Origin: Haliotis rufescens
Taxonomy: Eukaryota
DNA: 64,000 bases
Assembly: GCF_023055435.1 (NCBI RefSeq)
Contig: NW_025964112.1
Span: forward strand, 60,202,001-60,266,000
Reading direction: 5' to 3'
Of the stretch, positions 1,431 through 58,513 are shown piece after piece. The first letter of the stretch is position 1; each line of letters starts with the position of its first letter. The notes under the pieces are model-generated. The model saw only the letters and a list, made by a program, of their open reading frames with translations, was not told the origin of the DNA and ran no database searches. A program made the translations under genes and the position numbers.

Positions 1431-2519
1431 TCTACGCATTTTCACTGAACATATCTATGTCTGTATGTGTCTACATATGCGTATATATCCTCTCGGTATC
1501 AGCTGTTGTGTTTTATAAGAAAAAAACTTAACTTAACTTGACTTGGAATACAGTGTAACCCATTCTCGTCACGGGCTAAGGGCATAATGGCTTGTGTGTG
1601 TAATATTCAAAAGGATTTTTTTCTTTTATATATTTAATCAATATATCGTTCATTAAACTTCCCCTTATACTGAATGAAGTTTCTTTAATCTTGTCAAAGA
1701 ATATTCCCTGATCATCCAAGCCACTGTCCCAATACCGCGTTCTCCTCTCTGTTATTTTCGTAAGACTGGACCATTAAGAACCGGCACCATTGAGATCAAA
1801 AAGCAAATAAGCCTCACAGCGCCCATGGCCAGAGCAAATTAATACATGTTTTCCTTGTACAGAGCTCTAGCACCGAGACTCCAATTGTCCCCAATACAGA
1901 GCTTAACACCCCCTCAGATCCGCCAAGAGGCGTTTATTGACCAAAATCCAATTTCTTCTCCTTCAGTCGAGTTTATTGTTTGTATTAAGTTTCATTCTTG
2001 AGTCCGCTGTACTGGTGAGCACAAATCGACTCAGTTGTCATAACAACAGCAGTTCATACATTGATTGGTCAGGCATTGATCTGAGATCGATATTGTATGA
2101 TCCATCCTTTGTCTGGGTGTCCACGCTGCCAAAACAAGGACATGTTTGAATGCTTCCATGTTCACATTCCATTATTGATGTCACGTCAGAACGGATACTG
2201 AATCAAGAGACTTGATCGGAAAGGCTTTGAGTTTGGGAATTGCCATTGACCAAAGTCAGCAGAAAGCAGAACTCGTTTCGCAGGACAGCTTGACTGGCTT
2301 TCAGGTACCGTGACAACGAGACGCATCCCCTGTTGTAGAGATCCGACACATGTGGATTCGTATCCCAGGTCCCAAACGATTTATTTTAGCATTAAACAGA
2401 GAGTCAATGGTTATACCGTGTTGCGCCACTTTGAGTTTATATTTCTTCAACTGTCACTGTTACCCTTAAGAAGACACGCTGCTATTCCCGTTTCTTTTAT
2501 CAATAACAACAATTCCAAT

Positions 2520-2728
2520 ACCATTTTAACACGATACCCCACTCAGACACAGTATAATGACTCCAAGCCGACCAGTCCTTCTTTTATTCCTAGCACTGCA
2601 GGGCGTCTCCAGGCAGAGTAACAACAAGTACCATCTTTAACGTGTTTTCGTATGACCCATCCGGGGATAGAACCACCGACCTTACTCTCTCCGGGCAGAC
2701 GCTCTATCCACTAGACCACGGAGGCGAT
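2520..2728 (-). mobile_element. Family B SINE (Meta/MESC-like), partial copy
   Basis: Reverse-complement match to the head and core of 11733-12084. Confidence 0.8.
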
Positions 2729-5944: not shown

Positions 5945-6100
5945 TTTGTTTTTTTAACGTCGCACTCAGCAAAAATCAAGCTATATAACGGCGGTCTGTA
6001 AATAGGTCTGCACAAGATAACCCTGTGATTGACATCATAAGCATCGATCTACGTTATTGGGATACCATGACATGCAGCAACCAAGTCAGCGAGCCTCAAC
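5945..6100 (-). mobile_element. Family D retroposon, diverged 3' part
   Basis: cgcactcagcaa..ggcggtctgtaaata..aaccaagtcagcgagcc matches 50893-51143. Confidence 0.75.
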
Positions 6101-8634: not shown

Positions 8635-8765
8635 GTGACATGATATCGCCGTATCCCGACGGTGAGGATCGTTGCTTCTGATTACAACCACTGGTGTGTC
8701 TGGCCCAAACTCGATTATTTAGTCAGTCGTGATACAGATGGAATATTGCTTAATGCGGCGTTAAT
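8635..8765 (+). mobile_element. Family D retroposon, strongly diverged remnant
   Basis: gtggtcagg..cactggtgtgtctggcccaaactcgattattt..ggaatattgcttaatgcggcgttaa. Confidence 0.6.
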
Positions 8766-8769
8766 TCTC

Positions 8770-10330
8770 ATGTTAACTGCAGGACTCCTCAATGAACCCA
8801 GTGCCTATTGCTCTCAGTGGTTTAGAGAATGTTGACTGACAGGATTCTGTCTGAACCCAGAGCCTATTACTCTCAGTGGTTTAGAGAACGTTGACTGACA
8901 GGATTCCTCACCGAACCAAGTGCCTATTGCTCTCAGTACTTTAGAGAATGTTGACTGGCAGGATTCTGTCTGAACCCAGTGCCTATTACTCTCAGTGGTT
9001 TAGAGAATGTTGACTGGCAGGACTCCTCAATGAACCCAGTGCCTATTGCTCTCAGTGGTTTAGAGAATGTTGACTGACAGGATTCTGTCTGAACCCAGAG
9101 CCTATTACTCTCAGTGGTTTAGAGAACGTTGACTGACAGGATTCCTCACCGAACCAAGTGCCTATTGCTCTCAGTACTTTAGAGTACGTTGACTGGCAGT
9201 ATTTCCTACTGAACCCAGTGTCTATTACTCTCAGTGGTTAAGAGAATGTTGACTGGCAGGATTTATCACTGAACCAAGTGCCTATTACTCTCAGTGGTTT
9301 AGAGAACGTTGACTGGCAGGATTCCTCACTTAACCTAGTGCCTATTACTCTCAGTGGTTTAGAGAACGTTGACTGGCAGGGTTCCTCACTGAACCCAGTG
9401 TCTATTACTCTCAGTGGTTTAGAGAATGTTGACTGGCAGGATTCCTCACTGAACCAAGTGCCTATTACTCTCAGTGGTTTAGAGAACGTTGACTGGCAGG
9501 ATTCCTCACTTAACCTAGTGCCTATTACTCTCAGTGGTTTAGAGAACGTTGACTGGCAGGGTTCCTCACTTAACCTAGTGCCTATTACTCTCAGTGGTTT
9601 AGAGAACGTTGACTTGCAGTATTCCTCACTTAACCTAGTGCCTATTACTCTCGGTGCTTTAGAGAATGTTGACTGGCAGGATTCCTCACTTAACCTAGTG
9701 CCTATTACTCTCAGTGGTTTAGAGAACGTTGACTGGCAGGATTCCTCACTTAACCTAGTGCCTATTACTCTCAGTGGTTTAGAAAACGTTGACTGGCAGG
9801 GTTCCTCACTTAACCTAGTGCCTATTACTCTCAGTGGTTAAGAGAACGTTGACTGGCAGGATTCCTCATTGAACTCAGTGCCTATTACTCTCAGTGGTTT
9901 AGAGAATGTTGACTTGCAGTATTCCTCACTGAACCCAGTGTCTATTACTCTCAGCGGTTTAGAGAACGTTGACTGGCAGGATTCCTCACTTAACCTAGTG
10001 CCTATTGCTCTCAGTGGTTTAGAGAATGTTGACTTGCAGGATTCCTCAATGAACCCAGTGCCTATTACTCTCAGTGGTTTAGAGAATGTTGACTGGCAGG
10101 ATTCCTCACTGAACCTAGTGCCTATTACTCTCAGTGGTTTAGAAAACATTGACTGGCAGGATTCCTCACTTAACCTAGTGCCTATTACTCTCAGTGGTTT
10201 AGAGAACGTCGACTTGCAGGATTCCTCACTTAACCTAGTGCCTATTACTCTCAGTGGTTTAGAGAACGTTGACTGGCAGTATTCCTCACTTAACCTAGTG
10301 CCTATTACTCTCAGTGGTTTAGAGAATGTG
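8770..10330. repeat. 60-bp minisatellite, ~26 copies
   Basis: Unit agagaacgttgactggcaggattcctcacttaacctagtgcctattactctcagtggttt; copies align in register with the 60-nt lines. Confidence 0.97.
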
Positions 10331-11264: not shown

Positions 11265-11429
11265 GGGCGGTCGGGTAGCCTAGTGGTTAAAGCGTTCGCT
11301 CGTCACGCCGAAGACCCGGGTTCGATTCCCGACATGGGTACAATGTGTGAAGCCCATTTCTGGTGTCCCCCGCCGTGATATTGCTGGAATATTGCTAAAA
11401 GCGGCGTAAAACCATACTCAGTCAGTCAG
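11265..11429 (+). mobile_element. Family A short tRNA-derived SINE, full length
   Basis: A box TAGCCTAGTGG, B box GGTTCGATTCC, tail ctcagtcagtcag, TSD tcagggcttttggc on both sides. Confidence 0.92.
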
Positions 11430-22007: not shown

Positions 22008-22352
22008 TGAAATGGGGTTTAACGTCGCGTCCACGATTATTGCACTTATATAGCGACGTGCATGTACGTGTGAGTGTTTGTGTGGCTGCTTGTACTAGTC
22101 CGGACTGATGCCGATTTATAGTGCTAGCCCACTGAGATACTATGCCGCAGTTTAACATGAATACCCCACTCAGATACAGTATACTGACTCCGAGCCGACC
22201 AGTCCTTGTTTTAGCCCCTGAATGCCGAGCGCCAGACAGGGTTACAACAAATACCATCTTTTAACGTCTTTTGGTATGACGCGGCCGGGGATCGAAACCC
22301 GGACATTCCGCTCTCCGGGCGGACGTTCTACCACTAGACCACGGAGACGGTC
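22008..22352 (-). mobile_element. Family B SINE, full length
   Basis: High-identity reverse complement of 11733-12084. Confidence 0.9.
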
Positions 22353-23817: not shown

Positions 23818-24096
23818 TTTGTTGTTTGTTTTGTTTGTTGTTAAACGCCGCTCTCAGCAATATTCCAGCTATATGAGGGCGGTCTGTAAATAATCGAGTT
23901 TGGACCAGACAATCCAGTGATTGACATCATGAGCAACGATCCACGTAAGTGAGATACGATGACATGCATCAACCAAGTCAGCGAGCCTGACGAGCCTGAC
24001 CATCCGATCTTAGTCGACTCTCACGACAAGCATAGCTTGCTTTTACGGCAAGCATGGGTTGCTGAAGACCTATTCTACCCCAGATCTTCACGGGTC
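23818..24096 (-). mobile_element. Family D retroposon, full length (double-hairpin variant)
   Basis: Ends ..gatcttcacgggtc; short imperfect TSD ctgaatg/ctggatg. Confidence 0.85.
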
Positions 24097-26943: not shown

Positions 26944-41995
<15,052 letters not shown>

Positions 41996-42260: not shown

Positions 42261-45200
42261 ATGAGCAAATCTGTTGATTTTAATTGTGGTGTTGTACTAC
42301 CAGCTAGCGGAACTGGTGAGCGAATGGGCATTTGTACACCGAAACAGTTTCGTGATGTTTTAGGCAGACCTTTGATCGTCTTCACGATTTCAACATTTCA
42401 CAGGTGACCGATACAGAGTCAGATAGTCTTGGTTATACATTCAGTGGGTTATTTGCACTTGAAAACATATTCATATTAACTGCTTTAATCCAAAGATCGT
42501 CTTTGTAATTCTATTCTCAATTCAACGAGAGCTTTTATTTAAATCAAGTACAAAGCGATGATAACCCAGGAGATCGAGCAGCTAACTCATCAGCTCATTT
42601 ACTCCCTACCTGCTCATCAAGCGAATCATGCTTAATTCAGCCATATTAGTGAAACTAATGGAAGCCGTCAAGCAAGTGATACGTTACATGTCAACCAGTG
42701 TCAGTCATTCAATTTTGTATTTTTTATTCACTGCGAACAATATCACAATATATTTCCAAGTTTGCCCCACAAGGGCACTTAGATTGGAATCCTAGCTAAA
42801 TCCATGATGTAGGACAGTTATTTTTTTCTTTCAAATAAGCATGAACGTGATCATTGATGATGAAAATCAAAAGGTCCTTGTCTAACCCTTATGTTAAGAA
42901 TGATAGATGTAGTGTCGTTAGATTCGATTACTACAGCAACATACTCCAACAACTTGTGTATTTTGAAAAATTTATGTTGTCCGGAGCATGATTTAATTGT
43001 CTCATCAGGGTGTGTAATGTGTATTTTCCGTGAAGTATAAGCATGAATTCTTTGTTTACAACTGATGACTTGTAGAGTATACAGCGTTAGAAACTAACAG
43101 TTTTAGTCCACTAGTCCTTAAAATGATTCGTCACGATATGGCTGAAATATTGCCGATGTGACGTAAAGCATTAACTCACTCACTCACATAACATATAGCA
43201 AGACCCTTAAAAAGGGCTAATTTCTTCTGGTCCTTATGATACCTTAACTATTGGGCACTTTGGCAAGGACTATAGGACTAGTGCCAATTTCTAACACTGG
43301 TATATGTGTGAAAGGTTTCCATGGATCAAGTTCATCATTGTGACAGTGTCGGAGAGCTGCAAGGACACCATGCTCCAGCTGGTGACAGACTACAACCTAC
43401 ACAAGGTCACTGTTGTTGCTGGGTCTACAACAAGGCACAGATCTATCTACAATGGCATCAAAGCAGTTCCAAGTGGTACATCCGAATGAATAATAATATA
43501 CAGTATTAATAATGATTTAGCAATAATAGAAAACATGTAACACAATGATATAACCATTAGTTAGTAGGATGAACATTCACACATACATATATGATTTATT
43601 TGCAATAACAAGAGTGTGTGAAACGGATTTGTGCAGAAATTGCAATATTATAGGTGTAACCATGGTAACAATGTGACACGATGTGGTTTGTAAGCAGGGA
43701 GAAACACAGCAATTGAAGGCATGTTTCAAATTACAGTAAATTTAATCTCAGTCAAGTATCTGTGGTTTGTGCTTTTAAACAAAACAATATGCAAGGTTTG
43801 CTTAATGTTCTACACAGGATTGCAGATTGATCTTTTAGTTATCTTTTTCTTTCAAGGAATCTGTCCTATTGTTTCCTGAACATGATGAATGTCTGTCATA
43901 CATCCGAGTAATCTCTGTATATAATATGTGTGTCAATTCATTGCTTATTAAATTGTTTGATAGGCATTACTTATGTTTCTCATGTTTACACTGGCATCCT
44001 ACTGGAACATTACGCAACCATTTAGCTTAAAATTCCAGTAAGGTAGAATTATGCAGTGTTACCTCCCTTAGCAGTTCAAGGATCCTCTGGTTGTTGGTTA
44101 TGATGTCAGATCACCCATACTTTGTTCCTTGATCTATGGTCATGATATGAATCACTTTGGGCTTCTCACCACACAAATGGAGAGAAACCTACCAGGTGTT
44201 TTAGATGATGTTCTCTTGACTGTCATAATTGATATGATACTTTTCAATAACCATTCAGTCTTGTTTAGTTTAATTTCAAATATTCAGAAGAATCAACAAT
44301 GAAAAAAATACTGTCAGTAGCTTCATCTACCACTGATTGATAATGTTTTTGCAATTAAAAAAATCGATGTGTAGTATATCATTACTCAGTAGTGATATAC
44401 TACATGTTGATTTTTTTAATTGCAAAAAATTCAAAAATTCCATCTCGGACATGTCCGGCGCATATGACCGTTTTCGGACCTGCATTACTGCATGCTATGG
44501 AGTGCTGTAGAAGCACATGGTATTGTTTCCATTACAGCAGTGCCACACATACTGTGCGTGAACTGTGTCAGGCGTGACATCATCAGTGTATGACGCCATC
44601 GTCAGTAAATGATTGGATGTTTTCTTTGTGATTTGCCCCAAATACACGACGCTCTGGTTGTCATTTTAAGACATAATGGTACCCATGATAACACACTGAT
44701 ACATGCCCACTGTTTCAGTATGCAGTGCACCTGATGTTGTCTTGATTCATGATGCAGTGAGAATATTTGGTGAAGAAGATCTCATCCGAGACATTGCCTT
44801 GGCTGCCAACAAACATGGGGTAATGATCTTTGCTATTCTTGTTAATCCTGACCATGTTTATGTGGTGTGGTAGCCTAGTTGTAACAGTGTTTACTCATCA
44901 CGCCAGAGTTCTATCCACCCACAGGTACCATGTGTGAAGCCAAGTACTGGTGTCGTCCCCCCCCCCCCCCCCCCCCACATCATCGCGGTCTTGCGGGAAT
45001 ATTGCCGCAAGCTGTGTGAAAACCATACTCACTCAGTTACCCACTCAAACATGTTGAGTATTCACATCATCAGCAGACCTGTGAAGATCCGGGGTAGAGT
45101 AGGCCTTCAGCAACCCATGCTTGCCGTAAAAGATGACTTTGCTTGTCGTTAAAGGCAACTAACGGGATCGGGTGGTCAGGCTCGCTGACTTGGTTGATGC

Positions 45201-48200
45201 ATGTCATCGATCCCAATTGCGTGGATCGATGCTCATGATATTAATCACTGGATTGTCTGGTCCAGACTCGATTATTTACAGACCGCCGTCATATAGCTGG
45301 AATATTGCTGAGTGCTGCATTAACCAACAAACCAACCAACATCATCATCAACATGTGACAAGATGCTGTGTAACACGGAATTATTGTTTTTTTATGTGAA
45401 TCTCATTGTCATGCATGCATCATGCGTGAAAGTATGTGCTACTAAGTTATTAAGCTGTCACTAAGACATTGTTATTCTGCCAGGCATCAGGAGTGACCCG
45501 TCCCCTCGTATCCACGGTGATTGCGTCCGATTCTGAAGGGATGTTGACAGAGTCCCTAGACAGAAATCAGTACGCTGCGAGCGAGATGCCACAGGGCTTT
45601 AAGTACCACGTCATCAAACAGGCCTATGAGAAGGTAATCATAATGCAGATGAGAATAGTGTTTCAGTATTACCTCGTTTAACAGGCCAACGAGAAGGTAA
45701 TTCTAAGACAGACAGCGACAAGGATTTACACATGAGGGAACCACACTGAGGAATTGATAATCACATATGGTATAATTTACTTTCATTATGTAAGGTGGAA
45801 ATGTTCTAATGCCAGAATTTAATTACTTGTTTTACTGATTTTTATGCCCAAAAATGCCTGAAGGCAGTAAGGAAAAAAAACTGTTTTCCACATAAAAAAA
45901 TCACAGACTACCGGTAAACATATCACTGGATGGTAGAAGGGTCCAGGCTAACATTCACCATCCTTCACCTTTTGTTATTGGGGAGACCCGTGAAGATTCC
46001 GGGGTAGAATAGGTCTTCAGCAACCCATGCTTGTCGTAAAAGGCGACCAACGGGATCGGGTGGTCAGACTCGCTGACTTGGTTGATGCATGTCATTGATC
46101 CCAATTGGGTGGATCGATGCTCATGATATCAATCACTGGATTGTCTGGTCAAGACTCGATTATTTACAGACCGCCGTCATATAGCTGGAATATTGCTGAG
46201 TGCGGCGTTAAACAACAAACCAATCTATCTATCAATCTATCAGTTATTGGGGAACTAATGAAACAAGTTCAAGCAGGCCTAAACTGTCCACAGACTGTGA
46301 CCCAGTGTTTTGATCAATTTGACCAGTGTGTCAGTTACCCCTTGACCAGTCAAAGCCACATCAGACTTTGCTTCAGCCATCGGGGCAAGGGTTAGGGACT
46401 GACATCACTTCAAAAAGGGGTCTCTCTTTTGCAACAGACAACTTTAGAGCTATTCAAATGTAATCAGTGCATGTTTTGTCTCATTTCTGCTGGTGCATAT
46501 ATCCCAGTCTCATTTTATGAAGAGTAGAAAAATGTAGTCTTACTTTCTACTTGCCATCAAAAGTTCTGCTCTGATGAAAGACGGGTTGTCTGTGAATCAT
46601 TCCCTTACTTGTGCTCATTCCTCCAGGTTGTAGTCAGCCCAGATTATAGTTTCAGTTTATCATTTAACTTAAGCATTTATCCATGACATAAGCTTATGAC
46701 ATAAAAACATGTATGTCATACCCCAATGACATAAGTATGCAAATAAGATATGCAAATTAGATAACCGGAAGAGCGAGCGGTTTGATTTGAAACTATATAT
46801 TATAAGTGAAGTTACACCAGAGATATAATCAGATTACACAGAATCGTTGTTGTTACCGTTATTAAAGTTTCAATTATTCTGCAAAAGTCTGTTCAAGTAT
46901 TTTGTTTAAAATAATCCGAGGAACTTTTTTTCTCAGCGAATTGTTTATTTTGGTTTACATGGCTATGGAAAACATGTATCACTACGCACGATCTATACGT
47001 AAGATTTCGACAAGTTGCTGATGTTAATGTTTAATGCAATTATTCCTTAATTTGGAAGCAAAAATGTGAAAATGATAAAAAGAATTCATCACGAGTGTTT
47101 TTTAATATGGGAAATATCAACCTCGTCCCGTTAATCGGTATTTGCCTCGCCAAAGGCTCGGCAAATACCTATTAACTAAGACTCAGTTGATATTTCCCAT
47201 ATTAAAAAACACTTGTGATGAATCCTCTATATATGTGCTGAGAAGTGTATGAAGCACATCTGACTCACATCAAAAAGCATAGATTTGAAGATTTACATTT
47301 TATTGACAGAGTACTGACTTTGATTTTGACTACGGTACTGAGTGTCTTCTGCTGGCCAAGAAGTATGCCGGGGTGAACGCGTGTATCGTGCCAGGCAAGC
47401 CCTACTTATGGAAGGTAGGCATATTAACATGCAGGTGTCGAATCAGTGTTGACAGGAGGTCAATGTACAAGTAAAGCCTCAGTGTTACATTGACAACACA
47501 AGACTACAGGACATTATGTCAGAGCTCCAGATAAGCTTTTGGTGTTGTGGGTATTTTACCCATGCATTTTAAAATCATTGGGTATCAGTAATTCTATCTG
47601 GGTATTCAAATTTCTGTTACCCACTAGTTTTTACAAATGTGGGTATTTAAGTTAAATATTTAAAAACACTTCATCTAGTCCCTGCAAACTGTTGTCGTGT
47701 GGGTTCGAGAGCTTTATAGGACTCAAAAATACTGCGATACTTCCACAAGAAAGTGTGATGGCAAATGATCATGATGTAAGTATTGTAACTGTCATCGTGG
47801 AGTTTGGCAAGGTTGACGGAATGTCCGTATAAAATTTCAAAATAAGTTTGATTTGCTAATCGAATACGCAGGGTTACTTCACATTATTTTGATGATACAC
47901 ACTAGTTTTATTTTTGTAGCGTATCTGTAATGTTCGTTGCGTATTTGATACACTTGAATTTTATTTCACTGCATATTTCTCCATTTCTGATGCGTATTTT
48001 ACGCAGATACGCAGCTTATCTGGAGCTCGGCATTATGTTACTATTTCTAATCAGCTGATTATAAAGTTATTTTCCTCAAAACAAAATTTTGAAATACGTT
48101 AAGGATTAAGTGCTTCTTATTGTGTTTTCAAAATACTGGAAAGGATCACTTGTTAAACAAGAAACTAGTGTGCAGAATCCATTTTTTTCAACAATGTTTT

Positions 48201-51200
48201 AGAAAATACCAGGAGTTAGAACAGTATGTTGATATATTCTGGATGGAGTAACTTCCTGACTTGGACTGTTTCCTTTCTGCCCAGGTCACCCACAAGAAGG
48301 ATTTATATGCTGCAGAAGCCATGTTGAAAGGTACTTCATCATCATGAGACCCGTGAAGATTCCGGGGTAGAATAGGTCTTCAGCAAACCATACTTGCCGT
48401 AAAAGGCGACTATGCTTGTCGTAAAAGGCGACTAACGGGATCGGGTGGTCAGGCTCACTGACTTGGTTGATACATATCATTGATCCCAATTGCGTGGATT
48501 GATGCTCATGTTGTCAATCACTGGATTGTCTGGTCCAGACTCGATTATTTTACAGACCGCCGTCATATAGCTGGAATATTGCTGAGTGCGGCGTTAAACA
48601 ACAAATCAACCAATCATCATCATGATTATGCAGGGATTGATCTAGGCCTACCCATATCCTGATATTCAGTTCCAAATCTGAAGCAAATATCAGCAATAAT
48701 TAACAAGTAGGAATTAAGGTTTACCACTTGAGGTTAATATGACTGATGGTATGGCTTTGGAGAGGTCAGTGACATGTTTAATTCAACATGATTAAATTCC
48801 ATGCATGTTAAAGTACCTCCGAATACAAGAAAATGATAACTTAAATAAAATAATTTTGAAATCTTTGGTAGGCATTAGAAGTTGCAAGAACATGAAGACC
48901 TCAATGTGAATAGCCTCCATTGCACAAGATGGACGATCATTAGAAATACCATCCTCTATGATAAAATCACCAGCTACAAATGTTGTATTCGTACCTCATT
49001 CAACTGCAGTTGTTGCTGCCAATATCACTCAATACCATTGTCATTTTTTTTTAAATTTTATTTAATATTGAGCAATATGTACATGAGTAATAAACTTCAC
49101 TCATTCCTGTAAAATGCTGTTTTTATTAGGAGTATATATGCAAAATATATCTTACTTGTTTTCACTTGTTAGACAAATTTGAAATGCTTTAGTTGTAATA
49201 AAAAGGATATCTCTATTTGATCAGTAACTACTGGTATCAATTATCATTGTATTTGGGATATAACAGCAATGATCTTGCTCAAAGTTTGATGGGACATGCT
49301 TCCATACCATTAAAAAAAATTGAAATATTTTGGATCACAGTCAGTCAGTGTCCCAGAAAATGAACCAATTTGAAACCTTGTAACCATGGTAACAGTAGGG
49401 TGGGACATACTTCCATACCATTCCGAAAATTATAATATTTTTGATGACAATCAGTCAGTGTCCCAGAAAATGAACCAATCTGAAACCTTGTAACCATGGT
49501 AACAGTAGGGTGGGGCATACTTCCATACCATTCCGAAAATTGAAATATTTTTGATGACAATCACTCAGTGTCCTAGAAAATGAACCAATCTGAAACCTTG
49601 TAACCATGGTAACAGTAGGGTGTTTGTTTTCACAGAGCAGTTTCTCCAAGTGTCCATACTGTCCACAAGTGGCCAAGCCACGTTAGTGGACACCCTTGAG
49701 AGGGAGCTGTGCACTGCCCTGAGATCCGAGCAGGTGAGGAAGGACTGAGGATGTGAAGTTGTGAGAGTCTGGGACTGTTGTTTTTGTACAAGTGAGAAAA
49801 AGGAGAAAAAAAACAACTTTTCGGCAATAGATGGCTTAATTATGTGGCATGCTAATTTGAAAAGTATGTGAGTGAAACAAAGTCAAAAATATTTATGATG
49901 TATAGTTTTGTAAGTGTGTTGTAAAATATAAAAACTAAAATGTATAGTTATGTATGTTGTGAAATGTAAAAAATACATTGTATAGTTTCATAAGTACGTT
50001 TTGAAAGTATTAGAAATATAATGTATAATTGCCAAACTAGGCTGGAATTCTTGGGCTCGACCGTAGCGCCACCAGTGGTTATTACGAGTTATGTTCCTTC
50101 TAAACCTCTCCTATGGACCAATCAGATTCCACCTCTCGTATCACTTGCATTTGTTTCACACAAAATGGTGGCGCCCAGTCAAAACGATCTGATTGATAAT
50201 CAAGATCTATATTGTGGTCTTACATAGCGAAGTGCATCAAATCACGTGAGCACCTTGATTAAAAACATGAAAAGACTTGGAAAATATATGTTGACAACGA
50301 GTTGGCGGTGCACATGCTTAGCAAATCCTGCAATCGACAGAAATCTGCACGACATTTTACAAACCGGAGTTCGATTTCGGTGCACGATTTTGATTGGACT
50401 ATGCATAGACTCGTTAGCCCAGCCAAAATGTAACTTCATAAAACCAGCCTAGTTCGGCAAGGGTGGAAACTGGACTTTTATAGTAAGTTAACTCACTTGC
50501 CTCGGGAAGATGGATGTATTGTTGCAGAAGTATATTGAATACCCCATGTGATACTCTGCAGGTGAAAGTGACATCAGAGATAATCCCCAAATCCAACTCC
50601 CCCAGTGAACATCCCAACACCTTCATCCACATCCACACCTCGCAGCCCAGTGACTGGTCAACTCTGAACCCTGCCACCCGTCCGTGTGGTGACCGCCTGT
50701 TGTTTGACCACTGCCACATCCATGTGTTTCTTCTGGACCCGACCCAGGTGTCCGCTCAGCATCACCAACTGAGTGTCCACTTCAAACAACTAGCCAAGCA
50801 GCTGCAGGATCAGCATTTCATAGTGTACGCTGTTCTAGCTCAGGTACTTCCCTCCCTCAATACAACTAACCTAGCTGTATAGTTTCATGATGGTTGGTTG
50901 GTTGGTTGGTTTGTTGTTTTACGCTGCACTCAGCAATATTTCAGCTATATGACGGCGGTCTGTAAATAATCGAATCTGGACCAGACAATCCAGTGATTAA
51001 TATCATGAGCATCGATCCACGCAACTGGGATCGATGACATGCATCAACCAAGTCAGCGAGCCTGACCACCCGATCCCGTTAGTCGCCTTTTACGACAAGC
51101 ATGGGTTGCTGAAGACCTATTCTACCCCGGATCTTCACGGGTCAGTTTCATGATGAGAACATAAAGTTTCTGAAAAACAATAGCTAGCATATTCCAAAGG

Positions 51201-58282: not shown

Positions 58283-58513
58283 GATTGTTTGTTGTTTAAC
58301 GCCGCATTCAGCAATATACCAGCTATATGACGGCGGTCTGTAAACAATCGAGTCTGGACCAGACAATCCAGTGATTGACATCATAAGCATCGATCTACGC
58401 ATTTGGGATACGATGACATGCATCAACCAAGTCAGCGAGCCGATCCCAATCCCGTTAGAAGTCTCTTACAACAAGCCTGGGTTGCCGGGATTCTAACCGG
58501 GATCTTCAGGGGT
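58283..58513 (-). mobile_element. Family D retroposon, diverged
   Basis: Ends ..gatcttcaggggt; TSD tttattcaa. Confidence 0.82.

What the first reader, a model, noticed from the sequence alone, without database searches (positions are those of the whole stretch)
45985..51143. Headless retroposon family D: identical, structured 5' end without a tRNA promoter, a candidate ribozyme-led or internal-promoter element
Seen: seven TSD-flanked copies (5' ends at 24096-, 39329-, 45076+, 45985+, 48348+, 51143- and, more diverged, 58513-) all begin at essentially the same base, GACCCGTGAAG. All end in the ggaatattgct..gcggcgttaaa + tetranucleotide tail shared with the tRNA SINEs. No Pol III A/B box is visible, unlike families A-C. 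The first ~110 nt have dense pairing potential: ACCCG with CGGGGT (or the later ACGGG), TGAAGATC with GGTCTTCA (pseudoknot-like), a GTCGT-AAAAG-GCGAC hairpin followed by TAA, and a GTCAG-GCTCG-CTGAC hairpin. Known: random 5' truncation gives ragged ends, whereas some non-LTR elements (R2, RTE, L1Tc/ingi) define a sharp 5' G with a self-cleaving ribozyme. Inference: this is a bipartite non-autonomous LINE derivative whose 5' end is set by a self-cleaving RNA or an internal promoter. By eye I could not fit it to a canonical HDV, hammerhead, twister or pistol consensus, so the fold could be non-standard.
Basis: partly seen in the sequence, partly recalled or inferred. Interest (0 to 1): 0.75.

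Follow-up and report, generated by a model that had tools for sequence, protein, structure and literature searches.

The report
Abalone SINE with a LINE-derived head
This is a very abundant short jumping element whose folded first 70 bases were copied from the leader of a long jumping gene, a type first described in molluscs in 2016; it left that gene's self-cutting RNA behind and does not look self-cutting itself.

Summary
Family D is a real SINE-like retroposon of about 231 nt with target-site duplications. It has tens of thousands of copies, a sharp 5' end, no tRNA head, and a hairpin tail shared with the tRNA-SINEs.

It fits the published "LP-SINE" kind (Matetovici 2016, which includes Haliotis). 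I found a source-type LINE in the same genome. It encodes an endonuclease and a reverse transcriptase. Its RNA starts with a 57-nt, nearly P4-less HDV-like ribozyme candidate. A module 78% identical to the D head follows directly. D begins exactly where the ribozyme ends, so D lacks the ribozyme.

Nothing supports self-cleavage by the D head:
- Rfam gives no match on it.
- Its first base is G in only 76 of 100 sampled copies, against 100 of 100 for the ribozyme-led LINE.
- All 100 sampled LINE modules still have the ribozyme in front of them.

One hairpin of the head is well supported by compensatory changes, and a 5'-terminal pseudoknot is plausible. I infer, but have not shown, that the 5' end comes from a transcription start at A2 with a variably added G.

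Earlier reports of this scan reached similar conclusions on other windows of this genome.

The parts
45985..46242 (+). Reference copy of family D: 231-nt element plus a (CAAC/CTAT)-type microsatellite tail. Flanked by the TSD GTTATTGGGGA at 45974-45984 and 46243-46253.
45985..46054 (+). Head module of about 70 nt, homologous to the LINE 5'-UTR module that follows the HDV-like ribozyme candidate in L227-L232.
45985..45990 (+). 5'-terminal GACCCG. It is the proposed 5' strand of pseudoknot PK1, pairing with CGGGGT at 46000-46005 in the loop of hairpin 1. G at 45985 is the variably present first base.
45991..46019 (+). Hairpin 1: TGAAGATT (45991-45998) pairs with GGTCTTCA (46012-46019). The loop holds the invariant CCGGGKTAGAAT. 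This is the helix supported by compensatory changes.
46024..46054 (+). Short closing stem CCC (46024-46026) / GGG (46052-46054) around hairpin 2, which is GTCGT (46033-46037) / GCGAC (46043-46047). The 22-nt unit holding hairpin 2 varies in copy number between copies.
46062..46078 (+). Hairpin 3: GGTCAG-ACTCG-CTGACT, at the start of the body.
46172..46209 (+). 3' tail hairpin CGCCG...CGGCG with loop ..ATATAGCTGGAATATTGCTGA.., followed by TT of TTAAAC. Shared with the tRNA-SINE families and similar in architecture to the LINE 3' end.
45076..45327 (+). Full-length D copy with two 22-nt units. TSD ACATCATCAGCA / ACATCATCAACA.
48348..48601 (+). Full-length D copy with two 22-nt units. TSD TCATCATCATGA.
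50914..51143 (-). Full-length D copy, 94.8% identical to the reference copy. TSD CATCATGAAACT.
23838..24096 (-). Older full-length D copy (80.8% identity). No clear TSD was found by the script.
39092..39322 (-). D copy whose first ~22 nt are diverged or truncated.
58292..58513 (-). Older D copy that starts at the A (AACCCC); its TSD runs up to that A.
5950..6096 (-). 5'-truncated D copy covering element positions 82-231.

Best explanation
Family D is an LP-type SINE, a short retroposon built from LINE parts. Its first ~70 nt are a folded module copied from the 5' UTR of an I/Nimb-like LINE of this genome. In that LINE the module sits directly 3' of a 57-nt, nearly P4-less HDV-like ribozyme candidate. 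D begins at the first base after that ribozyme, so D does not carry it. A body follows, and then a 3' hairpin plus microsatellite of the kind this LINE group carries; this presumably lets the LINE's reverse transcriptase copy D (inferred). The sharp 5' end of D is therefore not made by the LINE's ribozyme. It is most likely not made by self-cleavage of the head either. I infer that D RNA starts at A2 by transcription initiation. The G in front would then be a variably added base, as a cap-templated G would be. The module would act at the RNA level, for instance as a 5'-terminal pseudoknot and hairpin recognised by the LINE machinery or guarding the end. Shown here: the homologies, the anatomy, the covariation in hairpin 1 and the variability of the first base. 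Inferred: which polymerase transcribes D, the cap, and what the module does.
For: - Copy number and sharp end: 14,724 exact 5'-end matches, with unrelated flanks in 58 copies.
- No small-RNA head.
- The LINE: full-length RF02682 matches (46 rows; 693 exact start motifs). Six fetched copies read flank | ribozyme candidate | D-like module. cmscan gives E 0.002-0.005 and 29-31 bits. ORF2 has APE and RT domains. The fetched copy has the TSD TATGAGGTAT and an (ACTC)n tail.
- Head homology: 52-53 of 67-68 columns identical; BLAST E 1.7e-12.
- Tail: 24 invariant columns across the LINE end, two D tails and two tRNA-SINE tails, with different stem sequences that still pair.
- Structure: on 11 rows, hairpin 1 is 89.6% paired and 4 of 7 pairs change on both sides. 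PK1 is 84.4% paired with one such pair. Slid controls give 32-55% paired against 88.8% for the structure (similar).
- First base: G 76, T 12, A 7, C 5 in 100 otherwise perfect copies. The LINE start has G in 100 of 100. TSDs abut A2 in L018, L002 and window copy 58513. Position 2 is A in 14,724 of 16,726 matches.
- The kind is in print: passages of PMC4758252.
Against: - No RNA data bear on the start. Three small-RNA runs gave only 4-34 reads and no pile-up at the first base.
- Cap addition is only one reading of the variable G. One-base fraying by the reverse transcriptase or a wobbling start site would look the same, and position 2 is also somewhat variable (about 9% of dispersed rows).
- If the module were a promoter that starts at its own first base, ribozyme-less LINE copies should exist. 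None was seen in 100, so any promoter function must need the D context or master loci.
- Predicted folding energies are no better than shuffles (z from -0.85 to +1.42 in 9 sequences).
- PK1 is mostly invariant CCC/GGG, and in the youngest subfamily its second pair is an A.G mismatch.
- The similarity of the D tail to this LINE's tail is below BLAST detection, so the true partner may be a related LINE.
- I could not compare D with the published Hdi_LP/Hmi_LP or Nimb-17_LMi sequences, because figures and supplements are not held.
Confidence: 0.6

Rival explanations
1. The D head is itself a new self-cleaving RNA, or a substrate of a cellular endonuclease (for example RNase P acting on a tRNA-like pseudoknot). 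It would be cut at its own 5' edge, so read-through transcripts would be trimmed to G1.
For: The 5' end is sharp and the flanks are unrelated. The 5'-terminal bases can pair with the conserved hairpin loop. The loop CCGGGTTAGAAT resembles a tRNA T arm (CCGGGTTCGATT in the tRNA-SINE). In trypanosomatid L1Tc/ingi the shared 77-nt 5' piece is both promoter and ribozyme (cited in PMC4758252).
Against: No Rfam ribozyme matches at E<=10, nor on 8 loci holding diverged modules at E<=1. In the LINE, 100 of 100 sampled modules keep the ribozyme in front, so the homologous module is not cut at that edge before retroposition. The first base is G in only 76 of 100 copies, against 100 of 100 for the ribozyme-led LINE. 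The head lacks the P3/L3/P1.1 core that is plain in the LINE ribozyme.
Confidence: 0.07
2. D is transcribed by RNA polymerase III from a cryptic internal promoter, for example a T-arm or B-box remnant in the head or box-like motifs in the body. That would make it an ordinary SINE whose small-RNA origin has been eroded.
For: The loop GGGTTAGAAT differs from the recalled B-box consensus GGTTCGAAT at one base. 16 of 28 bases match the T-arm region of the tRNA-SINE (read by eye). There is no TTTT run in the young copies. The copy number is very high.
Against: No tRNA, 5S or 7SL model matches. The same module lies inside a LINE 5' UTR behind a ribozyme. The stem sequences change while pairing is kept, which points to an RNA-level role rather than a DNA box. 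The mismatch falls at the B-box C that I recall as critical. No A box lies at the right distance.
Confidence: 0.13
3. The sharp end comes from a few master loci with an external (upstream) promoter. The head would then be a passenger that matters only for the LINE machinery or RNA stability.
For: The LINE context shows that the module does not create ends by itself. Distinct successive subfamilies exist, as a master-gene lineage predicts: K=T forms with 9,413 matches, GGGGAT-stem forms with 68, and the young form with 14,724.
Against: Nothing identifies such loci. The 58 flanks examined share nothing. This rival overlaps with the best explanation rather than excluding it.
Confidence: 0.17
4. 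D copies are 5'-truncated products of a longer element (the LINE or a longer SINE), stopped at a reverse-transcription hot spot.
For: D starts exactly at the 3' edge of the ribozyme in the LINE alignment. Ordinary 5'-truncated D copies also exist: 29 of 45 unbiased tail-reaching hits start after position 7.
Against: No longer copies were found. The body of D is unrelated to the LINE beyond the module. LINE-type modules are always preceded by the ribozyme (100 of 100).
Confidence: 0.03

Closest known systems
LP-SINEs ('LINE promoter' SINEs) of gastropods and bivalves, including Haliotis Hdi_LP/Hmi_LP (Matetovici et al. 2016, PMC4758252; passages read)
   Same: A short, TSD-flanked retroposon with 3' tandem repeats. 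The head of about 70 nt is homologous to the first part of a LINE 5' UTR (Nimb/I and RTE LINEs in the paper) instead of a small RNA. The tail is shared with tRNA-SINEs of the same genome. The host genus is the same according to the scan's earlier notes.
   Different: I could not see the published sequences, so identity with Hdi_LP is unproven. The paper names no mollusc source LINE, no ribozyme next to the module and no RNA structure for the head. Here a source-type LINE in the same genome, its HDV-like ribozyme candidate and a covarying hairpin are shown.
RIME/ingi and L1Tc with the Pr77 5' signature in trypanosomatids (as cited in PMC4758252; otherwise recalled)
   Same: Non-autonomous derivatives and LINEs share only the 5' extremity. 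An HDV-like ribozyme defines the LINE RNA 5' end.
   Different: There the shared 77 nt are themselves the ribozyme and promoter. Here the SINE starts after the ribozyme and carries only the neighbouring module.
HDV-like ribozyme-led non-LTR retrotransposons (R2, RTE, Baggins; recalled, Ruminski et al. 2011) and minimal P4-less 'theta' HDV-like ribozymes of gut phages (recalled; lead from notes s1-816303 and s1-816319)
   Same: The source-type LINE fits this pattern: G1.U at the base of a 7-bp P1, a 6-bp P2, a 3-bp P3, a 7-nt L3, a CC/GG P1.1 and almost no P4. Its first base is invariant.
   Different: Family D itself has none of these features. The Rfam score of the LINE element (29-31 bits) is below the family's gathering score of 44, and cleavage is untested.
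R2 5' RNA pseudoknot bound by the R2 protein (recalled: Christensen 2006; Kierzek 2009)
   Same: A conserved pseudoknotted RNA lies near the 5' end of a LINE RNA, close to a ribozyme, and could be a protein-binding signal.
   Different: There is no sequence relation and no binding data here. This is only an analogy for what the module might do.
tRNA-derived SINE families A-C of the same window
   Same: The same 3' hairpin tail and the same style of microsatellite end, hence probably the same LINE partner group.
   Different: They have tRNA heads that Rfam recognises. D has none.

Membership tests
LP-SINE | Short non-autonomous element with variable TSDs and 3' terminal tandem repeats | tested here: met
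   TSDs were found in 23 of 45 full copies examined. Tails are microsatellites.
LP-SINE | Head homologous to the 5' part of a LINE 5' UTR, not to a small cellular RNA | tested here: met
   52-53 of 67-68 columns are identical to the module of an APE+RT LINE, with BLAST E 1.7e-12. No tRNA, 5S or 7SL match.
LP-SINE | Homology to the LINE limited to about the first 70 nt of the SINE | tested here: met
   The BLAST match covers D positions 15-66, and nothing else in D matches the LINE 5' 517 nt at a meaningful E-value. The alignment is good to about column 71.
LP-SINE | Head homologous to Nimb-17_LMi, I-3_DR and RTE-9_CPB 5' ends and to the published Hdi_LP/Hmi_LP | not testable with these tools
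   Repbase sequences, figures and supplements are not held. The text contains no sequence.
LP-SINE | The head works as a promoter (the name's claim) | not testable with these tools
   This is untested in the paper too. LINE copies never start at the module edge (0 of 100), which speaks against a self-contained start site there.
HDV-like self-cleaving ribozyme (for the D head) | Match to a covariance model of the class | tested here: not met
   No ribozyme family matches at E<=10 on 45900-46300. The same library does find the LINE's ribozyme candidate.
HDV-like self-cleaving ribozyme (for the D head) | Nested double pseudoknot with a 3-bp P3, an L3, a P1.1 and a C in J4/2 | tested here: not met
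   Read by eye. The 5' end can pair with ACGGGAT, and CAACCC with GGGTGG, in HDV order. But there is no P1.1 partner, hairpin 2 is 5 bp with a 2-nt spacer, and diverged relatives do not keep the P1-like pairing: L099, L090 and L210 pair that segment elsewhere.
HDV-like self-cleaving ribozyme (for the D head) | Invariant first nucleotide in retroposed copies | tested here: not met
   G in 76 of 100, against 100 of 100 for the ribozyme-led LINE.
HDV-like self-cleaving ribozyme (for the D head) | Self-cleavage in vitro | not testable with these tools
   This needs a bench experiment.
tRNA-derived SINE | tRNA-like head with A and B boxes | tested here: not met
   Rfam tRNA hits occur only at 11269-11340 and 22277-22348, which are other families. 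None lies on D. ARAGORN found 0 genes.

The most novel reading that the evidence does not exclude
The ~70-nt head is a conserved 5' recognition module of I/Nimb-type LINE RNAs: a pseudoknot plus hairpin placed right behind the ribozyme. The SINE would have taken it so as to mimic both ends of its LINE, using the 3' hairpin for priming and the 5' module for end protection or for the second-strand and 5'-joining step, much as the R2 protein uses its 5' RNA. That would be a new functional class of LINE/SINE RNA element, shared across animal phyla and distinct from promoters and ribozymes.
Probability: 0.25. Interest if true: 0.65.

Novelty: new member of a known kind. Interest (0 to 1): 0.35.

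Why it matters
SINEs are defined by Pol III heads taken from small RNAs. LP-SINEs are the one published exception, and how they make their 5' end has been open since 2016. This window adds three testable points to a known kind:
- A source-type LINE exists in the same genome.
- In that LINE, the borrowed module is the piece directly behind an HDV-like ribozyme, and the SINE left the ribozyme behind.
- The SINE's first base behaves differently from the ribozyme-made LINE end.
These points narrow the question to transcription start versus RNA-level recognition, and they give clear constructs for bench tests. The finding is not a new ribozyme, and this scan had already reported the same family on other windows.

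Tried and rejected
- The most abundant LINE of the genome is an I-clade family (ORF2 of 1260/1279 aa, RT plus RNase H). It is neither the head donor nor the tail partner. It starts AGTTTGTACTCC and ends in (GTAA)n.
- Flanks of partial D hits gave no shared LINE sequence, only nested or composite D copies and tRNA-SINEs.
- A metagenome scan with the loop motif gave 120 loci. About 9 carry a module-like context (L067, L070, L088, L090, L094, L099=L128, L102, L153); the rest look like chance matches. None has a long ORF behind the module or an Rfam ribozyme in front of it.
- The viral scan gave 6 matches, which I took for chance and did not inspect further.
- Twelve K=T loci and 14 GGGGAT-stem loci were older D-superfamily copies or tandem arrays, apart from L197 and L207, whose downstream sequence is not D-like; none was shown to be a LINE.
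- Ten 'non-D-looking' loci were mostly interrupted D copies (L218-L220, L222-L226). L217 is an intact module on an unknown element, and L221 is a tandem array of head-like units.
- RF01788 (the mosquito RTE ribozyme) gave nothing useful in the genome.
- Predicted folding energies are not better than shuffles.
- The sequencing runs were uninformative: 4-34 small-RNA reads per run, and contigs of one run labelled RNA only by guess.
- The literature has only the 2016 paper on LP-SINEs. Two searches found no paper on the structure or processing of this head.
- I considered deriving D's first 12 nt from the ribozyme's CGTGAAGA. I judged this a coincidence, because the GGGGAT-stem relatives lack it.

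Full report
**The observation.** The motif GACCCGTGAAG occurs five times in the window with at most one mismatch. Shuffles gave a mean of 0.64, and none of 100 reached five. In the alignment the seven copies share about 231 nt, have unrelated 5' flanks, and end in the same hairpin tail followed by different tetranucleotide repeats.

Five copies start at the same G. The copy at 58513 starts at the next base. The copy at 39329 is short by about eight bases and diverged at its start. A 22-nt unit that contains hairpin 2 is present once or twice in the window copies and up to four or more times elsewhere.

Rfam finds only two tRNA-like heads in the window, both belonging to other SINE families. 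It finds nothing on the D head even at E<=10, and ARAGORN finds no tRNA.

**Size and age of the family.** The head finds copies all over the 1.33-Gb genome, with 640 first-look candidates of which 40 were scored. Exact pattern counts are:
- 14,724 for the young 5' end, with a W four bases upstream.
- 9,413 for the loop variant with T. All 12 loci fetched for this variant are older D copies.
- 68 for a variant whose hairpin stem reads GGGGAT...ATCCCC. It occurs partly as dispersed old copies and partly as tandem arrays of about 52 nt.

Among 45 unbiased hits that reach the tail, 16 start within the first 7 bases. The rest are truncated, nested or split by the 22-nt repeat. In 58 copies listed with 30-nt flanks, nothing conserved lies upstream.

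**What is in print.** Notes from earlier reports of this scan pointed to "LP-SINEs". I read passages of Matetovici et al. 2016 (PMC4758252). The paper describes TSD-flanked short retroposons in Littorina, Haliotis and oysters. Their first ~70 bp are homologous to the start of the 5' UTR of Nimb-clade and RTE LINEs of a locust, zebrafish and a turtle. They share tails with tRNA-SINEs. The authors suggest promoter use and possibly Pol II, call for experiments, and mention the L1Tc/ingi 77-nt promoter-ribozyme as a parallel. The paper gives no RNA structure for this head and names no mollusc LINE. Two full-text searches found no later work on the matter. I could not see the published sequences.

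**Finding the LINE.** The most abundant LINE is an I-clade family with RT and RNase H. It has a different start and a (GTAA)n end, so it is not the donor. Following notes s1-816303 and s1-816319, I searched the genome with the Rfam model of a small HDV-like ribozyme, RF02682. It returned 46 end-to-end matches, most of them 57 nt long, at 25.6-31 bits, below the gathering score of 44.

Six fetched copies have unrelated 5' flanks. Each then carries the same 57 nt, followed at once by a sequence that aligns with the D head. In a small search, cmscan gives E values of 0.002 to 0.005 for these. Read directly from the sequence, the 57 nt have:
- a 7-bp P1 beginning with a G.U pair,
- a 6-bp P2,
- a 3-bp P3,
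- a 7-nt L3,
- a CC/GG P1.1,
- almost no P4.

Downstream of one copy lie an ORF of 464 aa and an ORF of 1043 aa with endonuclease and RT domains. After a frame change there is a weak RNase H piece. Then come a 3' UTR, an (ACTC)n tail and the TSD TATGAGGTAT, which matches the 5' flank. This is therefore a full-length LINE of roughly 6.9 kb.

**Relation of D to that LINE.** The D head and the LINE module are identical in 52-53 of 67-68 aligned columns. BLAST gives 84.9% identity over 53 nt with E 1.7e-12. The first base of D aligns with the first base after the ribozyme. Beyond about column 71 the two are unrelated.

The LINE's 3' end has a hairpin (GTCAC...GTGAC) whose loop reads like the loop of the D and tRNA-SINE tails, followed by TTAAA and a microsatellite. 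The alignment has 24 invariant columns. BLAST does not detect this similarity, so the real partner may be a relative of this LINE.

**Structure.** I counted pairs on two alignments of independent lineages. These were young and old D, GGGGAT-stem relatives, four LINE copies and two metagenome relatives. With 11 rows:
- Hairpin 1 is 89.6% paired, and four of its seven pairs change on both sides. One pair shows AU, UA, CG and GC.
- The pairing of bases 1-6 with the loop CGGGKT (PK1) is 84.4% paired, with one pair changed on both sides.
- Hairpin 2 is nearly invariant.
- Sliding the partners drops pairing from 88.8% to 32-55%.

With 7 rows the picture is the same, and the short closing stem is only 66.7% paired in fixed columns. 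Its register differs between lineages: CCTGG/CCAGG in L099, CCTCC/GGAGG in L090, GCCCC/GGGGC in L153.

Against a strong fold, minimum free energies are no better than shuffles (z from -0.85 to +1.42 for nine sequences). The sample is also small, with many single decayed copies.

**Does the head cut itself?** Four results argue against it:
- No ribozyme model matches the head, while the same library finds the LINE's element.
- The head lacks the P3/L3/P1.1 core. The HDV-like threading I could draw for D is not kept in relatives.
- In the first 100 listed copies with an otherwise perfect 5' end, the first base is G 76, T 12, A 7, C 5. Three of the T rows belong to one tandem array. Position 2 is A in 14,724 of 16,726 matches. 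In the TSD analysis of 45 full copies, 23 had a TSD. Of these, 13 have one G between TSD and A2. Five have none: three are clear, and in the other two the G is itself part of the TSD match. Five have other short extras. The ribozyme-led LINE has G as first base in 100 of 100 listed copies (693 matches).
- In 100 of 100 listed LINE-type modules, the ribozyme's 3' end stands in front (519 matches). The homologous module therefore does not create a 5' end at its own edge before retroposition.

The last result also weighs against a self-contained start site at the module's first base in the LINE context.

**What sets D's end.** This is not shown. A first base that is usually G, sometimes absent and then replaced by flank-like bases, is what a cap-templated extra G on an RNA starting at A2 would give. 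That effect is recalled from work on L1. One-base fraying or a wobbling start would look alike.

RNA data did not help. Three small-RNA runs laid on 45900-46300 gave 6, 34 and 4 reads with no pile-up at the first base. The fourth run is contigs whose RNA label is a guess. Runs under five coded species labels (organisms A-E) hold about the D share of the sampled words, so the element appears to be shared nearly unchanged by several runs' organisms.

**Verdict.** The reading as a bipartite LINE derivative is right. The ribozyme reading is wrong for D, although a ribozyme candidate does head the source-type LINE. The promoter reading stays open. The thing belongs to a published kind, and this scan had already reported it on other windows (notes). 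The added value here is the side-by-side test of the SINE's and the LINE's first bases, and the exact junction between ribozyme and module.

Noticed in passing
window 36930-37630: A 77-bp satellite (9.1 copies, 95% matches). Its unit resembles D positions ~22-110 (GAATTGGTCCCTAGCAGCCTATGCTGGTCGTAG...GGGTGGTCAGACTCGGT). It appears to be derived from the head region of a D-like element.
   Followed up: partly
L007 1073-1621; G000:C1:866876-867452; L198, L200, L201, L208, L209, L221: Tandem arrays built from the head. There are ~145-nt units of D positions 1-~135 with junction CCCAATTGC|GACCCG. There is a 48-nt-period array of CCCCGTGAAGATCC units. There are ~52-nt arrays of the GGGGAT hairpin, sometimes sitting at the 5' end of an otherwise normal SINE copy.
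   Followed up: partly
L018 1501-1870; L009; L024: In L018, D is inserted into another D at about position 113 (TSD ATCGTATCCC). L009 and L024 hold composites of a full D followed after its tail by D positions ~116-231. This suggests a preferred target or template switch at CCCAATTG, which resembles the tail repeat.
   Followed up: partly
L227-L232 positions 61-117; 693 exact starts genome-wide: A 57-nt, nearly P4-less HDV-like ribozyme candidate forms the exact 5' end of an APE+RT LINE. The first base is G in 100 of 100 listed copies. The Rfam RF02682 score is 29-31 bits, below the gathering score. Earlier notes of the scan describe the same element.
   Followed up: yes
L050, L061-L064 and the 150 rows: A very abundant I-clade LINE with intact ORF2 of 1260 or 1279 aa (RT plus RNase H) and 16,953 first-look RT candidates. 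It starts AGTTTGTACTCC and ends in (GTAA)n. One subfamily carries a D tail fragment inside its 5' region (L049, L061).
   Followed up: partly
L010 about 2352-2534 (minus strand): A small element with terminal inverted repeats CAGTAAACTACGGTTA...TAACCGTAGTTTACTG sits inside an old D relative, between TA dinucleotides. It looks like a MITE.
   Followed up: no
window 45076, 48348, 51143 copies: Three of the four clear TSDs contain CATCATCA or CATCATGA, which resembles the CAAC/CATC-type tail repeats. This may reflect microhomology between target and tail during priming.
   Followed up: no
window 46138-46180: In small-RNA run X22, reads lie mostly antisense to the D body, with 7 and 8 molecules beginning at 46166 and 46168. 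The numbers are very small. They may be silencing small RNAs against the SINE.
   Followed up: no
window 45995-46012 versus 11310-11335: The invariant head loop (GAAGATCCGGGKTAGAAT) matches the variable-loop and T-arm part of the tRNA-SINE head (GAAGACCCGGGTTCGATT) at 15 of 18 bases. This may be a T-loop-like motif or an old tRNA origin of the LINE module.
   Followed up: no
L217 (G000:C1:11601779-11602418): A module with intact loop, a different stem (CTAGG...CCTAG) and CCCC at its 5' side, followed by sequence unlike D or the LINE. This is an unidentified further carrier of the module.
   Followed up: no
window 8653-8764 and 8772-10326: A diverged D-like 3' part (77% identity to positions 114-227) is directly followed by a 60-bp tandem repeat of 26 copies.
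   Followed up: no
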